Below, piece after piece: positions 21,297 to 22,917 of a stretch of 64,000 bases of DNA. The stretch is from Rhodosorus marinus CCMP1338 (Eukaryota > Plantae > Rhodophyta), in NCBI GenBank assembly GCA_029953675.1, contig JAMWBK010000005.1, positions 2,046,001 to 2,110,000 of the forward strand. The letters run 5' to 3'. The position numbers and the translations under genes are program-made. The stretch's first letter is position 1, and every line of letters begins with the position of its first letter. A model generated the notes under the pieces. It searched no databases and had not been told where the DNA came from. It was given only the letters and a program-made list of their open reading frames with translations.

Positions 21297-22917
21297 ACCC
21301 TGACGTGATGTATTCAGCACGACAAATCCAGAAGCAAGGATCCAACCTACGACTTAGGGATGTCACCAACGACCCTGAAAAACACGAAGTTGAGTTAGCG
21401 AAAAGAGCCTCGAGATGTAAGCCCTGAAGCAAAATGGATCATTTCCAAGCCATCCTGACCACCAAGATATTCAACTCCCTAGCTAGCCTATAAAAAGGGT
21501 TCAGGACACACCGACCCTGAAGTCTCGAAAAAGCACGACATCTCACCATGACCCTGAGGCATAAATGAGCCCCATCTCATGAAAACGACCGCTACCCTGA
21601 GGCAATAGTGTCCTATTTCTCGTATAGGCCAAGGACACACTCAATGACACTCCAACCCTGAGGCATATACTGAGCGAAGACGAGAACTGGACGACAACCC
21701 TGAAGCATAGAACCCGAATGGTAAGAACACCATACTCTCCTGAGTTATGGTCCTTTCTCCTAGGCTCAACCCTGAAGCAATAATATATGTACCACAATAG
21801 TCCCACAATTGGGAAAGTGAACTTCTGAGGAGGATTCCGGCCGGTTGTAGAACATCAACAGGAGCCCGTGAACACTGGCGACTAAAACTCATACCAGAAA
21901 CATTGAAATCCTGGGTGCTCTATCTAGACAGCACTTCAACATAAAACCTTTCGGGGGGCTTTCGTCTGCTCTCAACCGTTCCAATAGAGCCAGGGTCCAC
22001 CGGCTTCAAAGAAGATTTCCCCTGCAACGTCTCCTTAAACAAAACCCAGCCTGCTCAGGCACAGCCGTATCGTAGATGCGGCTCAACTGAAAATACTCCG
22101 CGGGTTGGTGCAATCCAAGATGTGAATCACGCGCCGAACACAATCATTGGTGGTTTTTGGAGCTTGTCACATCATCCTTGGCCCTGAACAGGCTGCTACT
22201 CAAGTCGTTAATCTCGCAGTATCTATACAATCCATCATAAATTCGACAACAAATGATCCGTCAAGAACACAATGATCAGTAGAAAAACGTCGCAGAAGTG
22301 AAGTACGACCCGATTCGAGACTCGCCAAGCCTAGGTAAGGCGTAGGTAGTAAGGTTAAATATGCCTTTGCTCGCGTTTCTGAGGCAACACTGCTGACAAA
22401 ACCAATTCTATCATCTATAACCCTGATGGGTCCGGTAGTAAGGTTAAATATGGATTTGCTCGCGTTTCTGAGACAACACTGCTGACAAGACCAATTGTAT
22501 CATCTAATGATTGGTACTAACCCTGAAGTACCAATGATTTTCCATTCGTCGCTCGCGCTGTAGTATTGTACTACACCAACCCTGAGGCAAACACGGGATT
22601 CAGCAAACAATAATCTACGACGCTCGCTACGATGGGGAGAACAAAGCAGTGCGCTCCGCACGACTTGAAGAAGATTTTCGAGTAGCGCAGTCACCAACTC
22701 AACGTGCGAGCCATTTAGAACTTGAGCTGGAAGAACAGTTATAGCCAACATGAGCCCAAACGCCGACAACTAGTTCTTGATCAATCTCTCCGAAGTGACT
22801 GTCCTGGTTGTAATTGAATATCATCTGAAGTTGTTGTCTTTCTTTAGTAGTGTTGGTGTGTATCCCGAGGGGTCATCTCTAGGGCTCTTCGTTTCTGAAT
22901 ACACCGTAAACCTGAAG
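21297..22917 (+). promoter_or_regulatory. Cluster B of the ACCCTGA(A/G)G motif between rDNA and LSG1
   Basis: Exact copies at 21514, 21551, 21594, 21655, 21697, 21769, 22520, 22579; variants at 21297, 21372, 21421, 22420, 22909. Confidence 0.6.
22345..22506. repeat. ~72-bp duplication at 89-bp period
   Basis: ggtagtaaggttaaatatg...ttgctcgcgtttctgag(g/a)caacactgctgacaa...tcatcta at 22345 and 22434. Confidence 0.9.

What the first reader, a model, noticed from the sequence alone, without database searches (positions are those of the whole stretch)
21297..22917. Cluster B: densest motif array, between the rDNA promoter and LSG1
Seen: nine copies in 21297-21777 at spacings of 75, 49, 93, 37, 43, 61, 42 and 72 bp, several near 10.5-bp multiples, plus four more to 22917. 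The extended consensus is about AACCCTGARGCA, with unique spacers. Inference: an insulator or road-block array separating the Pol I promoter from the divergent Pol II gene, or a replication origin or barrier.
Basis: partly seen in the sequence, partly recalled or inferred. Interest (0 to 1): 0.72.

Follow-up and report, generated by a model that had tools for sequence, protein, structure and literature searches.

The report
Protein-site arrays flanking red-alga rDNA
A 12-base motif is repeated in same-direction arrays, with unrelated DNA between copies, in four gene-free stretches around a lone ribosomal RNA gene of the red alga Rhodosorus marinus. The arrays most likely dock one DNA-binding protein that stops polymerases before the next promoter, a familiar design with a new motif and unproven here.

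Summary
All 13 copies lie at the stated coordinates with the stated spacings. ACCCTGARG occurs 22 times in the window against about 1 expected. Every copy falls in four intergenic stretches that make up 16% of the window.

The window is Rhodosorus marinus contig JAMWBK010000005.1. It holds one rDNA unit on the minus strand, set among Pol II genes.

The motif is not confined to cluster B:
- One copy lies 41-52 nt past the LSU 3' end, with three more further downstream.
- One copy lies about 140 bp upstream of a putative, unmapped Pol I start.
- Arrays fill two other divergent intergenic regions (ClpB-type/FHA and YjeF_N/NOL9).

Within each array all copies share one strand. The regions share nothing but the motif. 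Spacers are unique, there is no fixed-distance partner element, no RNA structure and no Rfam match. The 10.5-bp phasing is not significant.

Best reading (confidence about 0.45): homotypic binding-site clusters for one sequence-specific protein, possibly Myb-type. They would act like TTF-I/Reb1 sites, as Pol I terminator, promoter-proximal site and polar road-block guarding downstream promoters. No binder, transcript end or fork data could be obtained, and no relatives were found.

The parts
21296..21779 (+). Cluster B, dense part. Nine motif copies, with 12-mers starting at 21296, 21371, 21420, 21513, 21550, 21593, 21654, 21696 and 21768. Spacings are 37-93 bp.
22419..22919 (+). Cluster B, sparse part. 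Four copies at 22419, 22519, 22578 and 22908. The first two each follow one copy of an 89-bp repeat (22345-22417 and 22434-22506). The last copy is 307 bp before the LSG1 ATG at 23226.
18422..18433 (+). Single copy GACCCTGAAGCC. It lies about 140 bp upstream of a putative, unmapped Pol I start (minus strand GTATGTAAGGGAGAGG near 18285) and 757 bp upstream of the 18S 5' end. This is a T0-like position.
   Evidence: the start site is an inference from the sequence only
11967..11978 (+). Copy CACCCTGAAGCA, 41-52 nt downstream of the LSU rRNA 3' end (12018). It is met by Pol I as TGCTTCAGGGTG. This is a T1-like position.
10382..11651 (+). Rest of cluster A. Copies at 10382, 11393 and 11640 (the last is weaker, ACCCTGAAACA). 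They lie between the rDNA 3' end and the PRMT5 gene start near 9533 (minus strand).
1406..1777 (+). Cluster 0. Eight copies with consensus CACCCTGAAGT and spacings of 31-85 bp. It lies between a ClpB-type AAA gene (minus strand, mRNA 5' end at or beyond about 1165) and an FHA-domain gene (plus strand, ORF from 2127).
26856..28025 (-). Cluster C. Five strong copies at 26856-26867, 26952-26963, 27085-27096, 27392-27403 and 28014-28025, plus three weaker ones. All are on the minus strand. They fill the divergent interval between YjeF_N (ATG 26732, minus) and NOL9/Grc3 (ATG 28215, plus).
12018..17665 (-). The single rDNA unit that the arrays flank: LSU 12018-15346, 5.8S 15589-15742, SSU 15872-17665.

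Best explanation
**What it is.** The motif Y-[A/C]-ACCCTGA-R-G-Y-A is the binding site of one sequence-specific DNA-binding protein of Rhodosorus marinus. The AGGGTT core on the other strand makes a Myb-type protein a reasonable guess. The arrays are homotypic site clusters that keep this protein bound at high occupancy over 0.4-1.6 kb of nucleosome-poor DNA.

**How it would work.** Bound protein acts as a polar block. A polymerase that meets the site as TGCYTCAGGGTT is paused and released.
- At the rDNA this gives a Pol I terminator. The first site is 41-52 nt past the LSU end, and back-up sites lie over the next 1.6 kb, before the PRMT5 promoter.
- A promoter-proximal site and the 13-site cluster B shield the Pol I promoter from transcription arriving from the LSG1 side.
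- The same protein would guard the ClpB-type and NOL9 promoters through clusters 0 and C.

**Shown.** The motif, its enrichment, its restriction to intergenic DNA, the single strand within each array, its positions relative to the rRNA ends and genes, and the absence of any other shared sequence.

**Inferred.** Protein binding, the identity of the binder, polarity of action, the Pol I start site, and termination itself.
For: **The motif is real and confined to intergenic DNA.**
- Counts are 15 against 0.83, 28 against 4.7 and 22 against 1.1 expected.
- All 22 ACCCTGARG copies lie in four intergenic stretches that total 16% of the window. None lies in the 36 kb from 28 to 64 kb.
- Five flank positions match in 24 of 35 CCCTGA sites inside these stretches, against 2 of 30 outside.

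**The motif itself is the functional unit.**
- The four regions share nothing but the motif.
- Spacers are no more alike than shuffles.
- Where recent duplications are visible, the motif is kept. These are the 89-bp repeats in B and the roughly 117-bp double units in cluster 0.

**Orientation.**
- Strand is uniform within every array: 8/8, 4/4, 13/13 and 8/8.
- All five groups lie upstream of a promoter and antisense to that gene (ClpB-type, PRMT5, rDNA twice, NOL9). This is the orientation in which Pol I meets the site just past the LSU end.

**It is not an RNA gene array.**
- No position within 60 nt on either side is conserved beyond the motif.
- Folding z-scores are -0.54 and -0.09.
- There is no Rfam match at E up to 5.

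**A known parallel.** Mouse rDNA has ten TTF-I sites spaced 18-123 bp with a conserved core and variable surroundings, plus a promoter-proximal T0. The clustering raises occupancy on chromatin (PMC3772059). Yeast Reb1, Rap1 and Abf1 sites road-block Pol II and lagging-strand synthesis (PMC5052057).
Against: - No binding, transcript-end or replication data could be reached.
- The Pol I start is a guess, so the T0-like distance is unverified.
- The dense cluster is upstream of the rDNA, about 3 kb from the putative promoter. The downstream cluster A is sparse, with spacings of 327, 247 and 1011 bp. This is the reverse of the mouse layout.
- In yeast, Pol II road-blocks showed no preferred site orientation, and Tbf1 (telomere-type Myb) sites gave no detectable pausing. 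Polarity and a Myb identity are therefore not implied by precedent.
- The orientation rule rests on five groups only (1 in 16 by chance). For the three divergent intervals it is the same statement as 'sense to the other gene', which would fit an upstream activating element.
- Uniform strand within an array could partly be a legacy of tandem duplication.
- No related sequence from another species could be recovered, so conservation is untested.
Confidence: 0.45

Rival explanations
1. The arrays are homotypic clusters of activator sites. They would act as an upstream activating sequence or enhancer for the adjacent genes (FHA, LSG1, YjeF_N and/or their divergent partners), and as a spacer enhancer for Pol I. 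The bound protein opens chromatin and recruits polymerase rather than blocking it.
For: - Three arrays sit 130-350 bp upstream of the ATG of a gene and in that gene's sense orientation: FHA, LSG1 and YjeF_N.
- rDNA spacers of many eukaryotes carry repeated enhancers upstream of the promoter (own knowledge).
- LSG1 and NOL9 are ribosome-biogenesis genes.
- The motif is one base away from telo-box/Tbf1-type promoter elements (own knowledge).
Against: - A copy 41-52 nt past the LSU 3' end and three more downstream of the rDNA are not upstream of any sense gene.
- The flanking genes share no function: a ClpB-type chaperone, an FHA protein, a YjeF_N protein and PRMT5.
- The Ub-L40 ribosomal-protein gene, histone H3 and three other divergent intervals in the window have no copy.
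- Thirteen sites over 1.6 kb is a great deal for one small promoter.
Confidence: 0.25
2. The arrays are polar replication-fork barriers or part of a replication origin or termination zone around the rDNA.
For: - Strand is uniform within each array.
- Orientation switches between clusters B (+) and C (-).
- TTF-I and Reb1-type terminator sites double as polar fork barriers in mouse and fission yeast (and own knowledge).
- Yeast general regulatory factor sites also stop lagging-strand synthesis.
Against: - There is no compositional switch at the arrays. Cumulative GC skew drifts smoothly.
- If + sites stop leftward-moving machines, as they must in order to terminate Pol I, they would stop forks moving co-directionally with Pol I. 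That is the opposite of the classical head-on barrier.
- Arrays at ordinary Pol II intergenic regions have no obvious need for a barrier.
- Nothing resembling an origin signature can be tested from sequence.
Confidence: 0.1
3. Each motif is the promoter or processing signal of a short non-coding RNA, making this a cluster of small-RNA units comparable to motif-driven piRNA clusters. Alternatively, the arrays are decayed repeats with no function.
For: - The arrangement is many short units with unique sequence between copies of a short motif, all on one strand.
- Traces of tandem duplication are present.
Against: - No conserved base lies at any fixed distance within 60 nt of the motif.
- Unit lengths vary from 29 to 158 bp.
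- There is no structure signal and no Rfam match.
- Flank composition differs between arrays: T/G-rich in cluster 0 and A-rich in B.
- A neutral relic would not keep an exact 9-mer 22 times while the spacers have diverged to randomness.
Confidence: 0.07

Closest known systems
Mammalian TTF-I 'Sal box' terminators (T1-T10 downstream of the rDNA, T0 upstream of the promoter)
   Same: - It is a homotypic cluster of about ten short sites with a conserved core and variable surroundings.
- Spacing is shorter than a nucleosome: 18-123 bp in the mouse, 37-93 bp here.
- All sites share one orientation.
- A further copy lies near the promoter.
- A copy lies shortly after the LSU 3' end.
   Different: - The sequence is different: GGTCGACCAG against ACCCTGARG.
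- The dense cluster here is upstream, 3.6-5.2 kb from the 18S end, and the downstream group is sparse.
- The rDNA is a single unit between Pol II genes rather than a tandem array.
- Equal arrays occur between Pol II genes.
- The binder is unknown.
Yeast Reb1/Nsi1 (and Rap1, Abf1) general regulatory factor sites: Pol I termination, promoter-upstream site and Pol II road-block termination
   Same: - One factor would serve both the rDNA terminator/promoter-upstream position and Pol II intergenic regions.
- It would protect downstream promoters from read-through (Colin et al. 2014 as cited there).
   Different: - Yeast sites are mostly single, not arrays of 8-13.
- Pol II road-blocks in yeast showed no orientation preference.
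- The motif differs (TTACCCG).
Telo-box / Tbf1-type interstitial telomere-like elements (AAACCCTAA in plants, ARCCCTAA in yeasts), bound by telomere-type Myb proteins. They occur in promoters of translation-related and snoRNA genes and in subtelomeric insulators.
   Same: - The core AACCCTGA differs from AACCCTAA by one base.
- The other strand carries AGGGTT.
- Two neighbours are ribosome-biogenesis genes.
- An insulator role is known for Tbf1 (own knowledge).
   Different: - None of the 22 strong copies has CCCTAA. The single canonical AAACCCTAA at 21219 is outside the array pattern.
- The conserved RGYA tail has no telomere counterpart.
- The ribosomal-protein gene in the window lacks the motif.
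- The telomere repeat of this species is not known to me and is not given in the genome paper.
- Tbf1 sites did not road-block Pol II in yeast.

Membership tests
TTF-I/Reb1-type Pol I terminator elements | A site lies shortly downstream of the LSU rRNA 3' end, in one orientation, with back-up copies. | tested here: met
   The 12-mer at 11967-11978 lies 41-52 nt past the LSU end (12018). Further + strand copies are at 11640, 11393 and 10382.
TTF-I/Reb1-type Pol I terminator elements | A promoter-proximal copy (T0) lies about 100-250 bp upstream of the Pol I start, in the same orientation. | tested here: inconclusive
   A copy at 18422-18433 has the same strand as the downstream copies. The start site near 18285 is only guessed from the sequence.
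TTF-I/Reb1-type Pol I terminator elements | Sites form a homotypic cluster at sub-nucleosomal spacing with unrelated spacers. | tested here: met
   Cluster B spacings are 37-93 bp and the spacers are no more alike than shuffles. However, this cluster is upstream of the rDNA, not downstream. The mouse values come from PMC3772059.
TTF-I/Reb1-type Pol I terminator elements | The sequence matches the Sal box (GGTCGACCAG) or the Reb1 site (TTACCCG). | tested here: not met
   The consensus here is Y[AC]ACCCTGARGYA. It would be a different recognition sequence.
TTF-I/Reb1-type Pol I terminator elements | Sites are bound by a TTF-I/Reb1-family Myb protein, and Pol I transcripts end just upstream of the site. 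| not testable with these tools
   There was no access to the R. marinus proteome by domain, to RNA-seq or to binding data.
Telo-box / Tbf1-type interstitial telomere-like elements | The motif is a piece of the organism's (or the canonical) telomere repeat, CCCTAA(A). | tested here: not met
   All strong copies have CCCTGA, not CCCTAA. The species' own telomere repeat could not be obtained, so a match to a non-canonical repeat remains open.
Telo-box / Tbf1-type interstitial telomere-like elements | The motif is enriched in promoters of ribosomal-protein, ribosome-biogenesis or snoRNA genes. | tested here: inconclusive
   The motif lies next to LSG1 and NOL9. It also lies next to ClpB-type, FHA, YjeF_N and PRMT5 genes, and it is absent upstream of the Ub-L40 gene. 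The sample is one window.
Tandem satellite / minisatellite | Whole units are similar head to tail with a regular period. | tested here: not met
   TRF reports no array at any cluster. Spacings are irregular and spacers are random-like.
Motif-driven small-RNA gene clusters or structured ncRNA | A conserved element lies at a fixed offset from the motif, or there is significant structure or a family match. | tested here: not met
   No conserved position lies within 60 nt. Folding z-scores are -0.54 and -0.09. There is no Rfam match.

The most novel reading that the evidence does not exclude
The five same-motif groups may form one lineage-specific, polar boundary system. It would wall off a solitary rDNA unit, a one-gene nucleolar organiser, and its immediate neighbours from the surrounding Pol II chromatin.

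All copies lie within about 10 kb of the rDNA, and none lies in the next 36 kb. Orientation flips only beyond the first convergent gene pair.

If this is right, the motif marks nucleolar-domain borders rather than ordinary promoters. Cluster B could be the retained terminator block of an ancestral tandem spacer.
Probability: 0.12. Interest if true: 0.7.

Novelty: new variant of a known kind. Interest (0 to 1): 0.42.

Why it matters
To my knowledge, nothing has been described about Pol I termination, promoter-proximal elements or insulator-type factors in red algae. This organism has a compact 31-Mb genome in which an rDNA unit sits directly between Pol II genes (PMC10250338). Read-through control there should be under strong selection.

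A defined 12-base site with about 35 copies in one 28-kb stretch gives a direct handle:
- It can be used as bait to purify the factor.
- It predicts where nascent Pol I and Pol II transcripts should stop.
- It can be scanned across the published assembly to ask whether the arrays are rDNA-linked or a general promoter-guard element.

If the binder is a Myb protein of the TTF-I/Reb1 or telomere type, the 'one factor for rDNA ends and Pol II road-blocks' design would extend to the red-algal lineage. If the arrays prove to be plain activator clusters, the finding is ordinary.

Tried and rejected
**Relatives elsewhere.**
- I scanned metagenome contigs for three ACCCTGARG copies spaced 22-52 bp apart. 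It returned at least 120 loci. All the loci read were regular tandem repeats or coding repeats, none with unique spacers or the RGYA tail. None is similar to the window.
- I used the spurious RRT15-like ORF in the LSU to fish rDNA contigs of relatives. The two long contigs fetched are tandem rDNA of distant eukaryotes (SSU 84-87% identical) and have no motif array in their spacers.
- Contigs carrying LSG1 relatives have no upstream DNA.
- An exact look-up of an ORF inside cluster B found nothing.
- The H3 look-up returned animal loci only.
- The ClpB search did not return the R. marinus gene model, so I could not extend leftwards. It did give a transcript from a related strain that places the ClpB-type mRNA 5' end at or beyond about 1165.

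**Hypotheses rejected.**
- Coding repeat: the spacings are not multiples of 3.
- Box C/D snoRNA cluster: the bases just before CUGA are conserved rather than variable, and there is no Rfam hit.
- Splice or branch signals.
- A second co-occurring motif: k-mer enrichment finds only this one.
- Helical phasing.
- Relic of a shared spacer on both sides of the rDNA: the flanks share only the motif.

**Telomere repeat.** The telomere repeat of R. marinus was not found in the genome paper or its supplements or in the algal telomere survey.

Full report
**Where the window comes from.** The LSG1-like ORF at 23226-24455 has its best match (90% over the read-through ORF) to a Rhodosorus marinus protein. 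The locus fetched for that protein, GCA_029953675.1 contig JAMWBK010000005.1 positions 2059226-2081333, is 100% identical to window 13226-35333. The window is therefore contig positions 2046001-2110000 of the chromosome-level assembly of the red alga R. marinus CCMP1338. That assembly is 31 Mb with 8392 genes (PMC10250338).

**Gene map.** Rfam finds one complete rDNA unit on the minus strand: LSU 12018-15346, 5.8S 15589-15742 and SSU 15872-17665. The surrounding genes come from the assembly's gene calls, Pfam and ORF translations:
- ClpB-type AAA gene, at or before 950, minus strand
- FHA-domain gene from about 2127, plus
- P450, minus
- FSH1 hydrolase, plus
- PRMT5, about 7.2-9.5 kb, minus
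- the rDNA unit, minus
- LSG1, 23226-25333, plus
- YjeF_N, 25499-26732, minus
- NOL9/Grc3, 28215-30374, plus
- NKAP-like, plus
- a gene with three HMG boxes, 32990-34557, minus
- further right, histone H3, a septin, a ubiquitin-L40 fusion and others

The two flanks of the rDNA share no sequence other than the motif. The unit therefore looks like a true solitary copy rather than a collapsed array.

**The observation.** The motif is far above chance.
- The 12-mer with at most one mismatch occurs 15 times against 0.83 expected.
- CCCTGARG occurs 28 times against 4.7.
- ACCCTGARG occurs 22 times against 1.1.

Positions that were not used to select sites support a real extended motif, Y-[A/C]-A-CCCTGA-R-G-Y-A. 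Among all 65 CCCTGA hexamers in the window, 24 of the 35 inside the four motif-bearing intergenic stretches match four or five of five flank positions. Only 2 of the 30 elsewhere do so.

- The helical phasing is not significant, with Rayleigh p about 0.24.
- The array is not peculiar to the rDNA-LSG1 interval.

**Full distribution.** The 22 strict copies, and about 35 copies counting weaker ones, fall into five groups. All lie in intergenic DNA within the first 28 kb, and none lies in the remaining 36 kb.
- Cluster 0 (1406-1777, + strand): eight copies between the ClpB-type gene and the FHA gene.
- Cluster A (10382-11978, +): four copies between the PRMT5 start and the rDNA 3' end. The last one lies 41-52 nt past the LSU end.
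- A single copy at 18422-18433 (+), 757 bp upstream of the 18S 5' end.
- Cluster B (21296-22919, +): thirteen copies.
- Cluster C (26856-28025, -): eight copies that fill the divergent YjeF_N/NOL9 interval.

Three other apparently divergent intergenic intervals have no copy (about 43-44.4 kb, 49.7-52 kb and 59.4-61.2 kb; gene order there was judged from ORF content only). The ribosomal-protein fusion gene also has none.

**What the arrays are not.**
- They are not satellites. TRF reports nothing at any cluster, spacings are irregular, and the spacers of cluster B align no better than shuffled spacers.
- They are not a dispersed repeat family. Pairwise comparison of the four intergenic regions finds only the motif.
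- They are not coding, because the spacings are not multiples of three.
- They do not look like RNA genes. There is no Rfam match even at E up to 5. Neither strand of the dense array folds better than shuffles, with z of -0.54 and -0.09. No base within 60 nt on either side of the motif is conserved, so there is no fixed-distance start, box or terminator.
- K-mer enrichment finds no second motif.

**Signs of selection on the motif.** The arrays grow by local duplication, and the motif is what survives.
- In cluster B, two 93%-identical 89-bp repeats are each followed by a copy.
- In cluster 0, two double units of about 117 bp are still recognisable.
- Older units have diverged to randomness while an exact 9-mer is kept 22 times.
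- Within every array all copies share one strand.

**Position and orientation.** Pol I moves leftwards in window coordinates and meets the first downstream copy as TGCTTCAGGGTG, 41-52 nt after the mature LSU end. A T-rich stretch lies in between. Three more copies follow before the PRMT5 promoter, which lies in tandem orientation.

Upstream of 18S, an AT-rich block is followed on the minus strand by GTATGTAAGGGAGAGG near 18285. This is a plausible but unmapped Pol I start, and the single copy at 18422-18433 would lie about 140 bp before it. Further upstream the spacer carries sub-repeats typical of rDNA spacers, of 139 bp, 56 bp and 89 bp, and then cluster B.

All five groups obey one rule. 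Each lies upstream of a promoter and is antisense to that gene:
- the ClpB-type gene, whose mRNA 5' end is at or beyond about 1165 according to a transcript of a related strain
- PRMT5
- the rDNA, twice
- NOL9

Any polymerase running towards that promoter therefore meets the same face of the site that Pol I meets at the end of the rDNA. Five of five is only 1 in 16 by chance. For the divergent intervals it is also equivalent to 'sense to the other gene', so this is suggestive and not proof.

**Mechanism proposed.** The simplest account is a single sequence-specific DNA-binding protein whose sites are clustered to secure high occupancy and to exclude nucleosomes. It would act as a polar obstacle in three roles:
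- Pol I terminator, with fail-safe copies
- promoter-proximal element
- road-block that shields downstream promoters in a compact genome where an rDNA unit abuts Pol II genes

This closely parallels the mouse rDNA. There, ten TTF-I sites with a conserved core and variable surroundings are spaced 18-123 bp apart. The clustering raises binding to chromatin and termination efficiency, and T0 sits next to the promoter (PMC3772059). It also parallels yeast Reb1, Rap1 and Abf1, which road-block Pol II and lagging-strand synthesis (PMC5052057).

The reverse complement contains AGGGTT, the core of telomere-type Myb sites, and the core differs by one base from the telo-box/Tbf1 element. This is a lead from memory, not a test.

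**Cautions.**
- The dense cluster is upstream and the downstream group is sparse, which is the reverse of the mouse layout.
- Yeast road-blocks showed no orientation preference, and Tbf1 sites did not pause Pol II.
- The Pol I start is not mapped.
- No binder, nascent-RNA, replication or cross-species evidence could be obtained.

I put about 0.8 on 'arrays of protein-binding sites' and 0.45 on the terminator/road-block function.

**Rivals.**
- An activating homotypic cluster (0.25). This fits the three arrays that lie 130-350 bp upstream of a sense gene. It does not explain the copies downstream of the rDNA, nor the unrelated functions of the neighbouring genes.
- A polar fork barrier or origin (0.10). 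This cannot be excluded and could coexist with the main model, as with TTF-I. There is no skew switch, and the orientation is opposite to a classical head-on barrier.
- Small-RNA units or functionless relics (0.07). The tests above argue against these.

**Search for relatives.** This failed.
- rDNA contigs reached through the RRT15-like ORF belong to distant eukaryotes without the motif.
- Other look-ups gave no upstream DNA.
- The species' telomere repeat was not found in the papers read.

**Verdict.** The feature is real, clearly non-random and almost certainly functional. Its most likely role is a familiar one: site clusters of terminator or general-regulatory-factor type at the borders of an rDNA unit and at some Pol II promoters. 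What is new is the motif, the lineage, and a layout with the dense cluster upstream of a solitary rDNA and arrays at neighbouring Pol II intervals. The origin reading and the helical phasing are not supported. I rate interest as moderate (0.42).

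Noticed in passing
window 12018-34557: A single rDNA unit is embedded among Pol II genes. Two ribosome-biogenesis genes (LSG1 23226-25333, NOL9/Grc3 28215-30374) and a gene with three HMG boxes (32990-34557; UBF/Hmo1-like is only a guess) lie within 17 kb upstream of it.
   Followed up: partly
window 18462-18720; 19467-19526 and 20118-20306; 22345-22506; 11142-11304: The rDNA flanks carry spacer-type sub-repeats: 139 bp x2, 56 bp x3-4 and 89 bp x2 (93% identical, each followed by a motif copy). There is also a 51-bp direct repeat with an inverted third copy that could form a 41-bp hairpin downstream of the rDNA.
   Followed up: partly
window 18050-18080 and 11703-11733: A 31-nt stretch, 74% identical and containing the exact 13-mer GGGATCTCTTGGG on the rRNA-sense strand, occurs both in the presumed 5' ETS and about 300 nt past the LSU 3' end. 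It may be chance or a shared processing or binding element.
   Followed up: no
window 21219-21227: One canonical plant-type telo-box, AAACCCTAA, lies 70 bp before the first copy of cluster B. It is the only such sequence seen near the arrays.
   Followed up: no
window 22508-22540: The motif copy at 22519-22530 sits in the loop of an inverted repeat (ATTGGTAC ... GTACCAAT). The other copies do not show this.
   Followed up: no
window 1-1165 (L137 1-1080): A transcriptome contig from a related Rhodosorus strain (JGI 3300017118, 87-91% nucleotide identity) aligns to 1156-285 and 194-1. This implies an intron at 195-284 and a 5' UTR of about 300 nt for the ClpB-type gene. The UTR is as conserved as the coding part.
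   Followed up: partly
window 12478-12846 (+): The LSU rDNA antisense strand carries the widespread spurious 'RRT15 / senescence-associated protein' ORF. It has thousands of database 'homologues' at 85-95% identity.
   Followed up: yes
window 44425-44835 (+): The histone H3 encoded here is identical in protein sequence to H3 found in sequences from many other organisms. An exact look-up returned histone-cluster loci from other assemblies, judged animal from their neighbouring genes, and none from R. marinus.
   Followed up: yes
L052 1263-1430: One metagenome contig from the motif scan carries plant-type telomere repeats (CCCTAAA) interspersed with CCCTGAAG variants. It is unrelated to the window, but it shows that this variant occurs in telomere-like arrays somewhere.
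   Followed up: no
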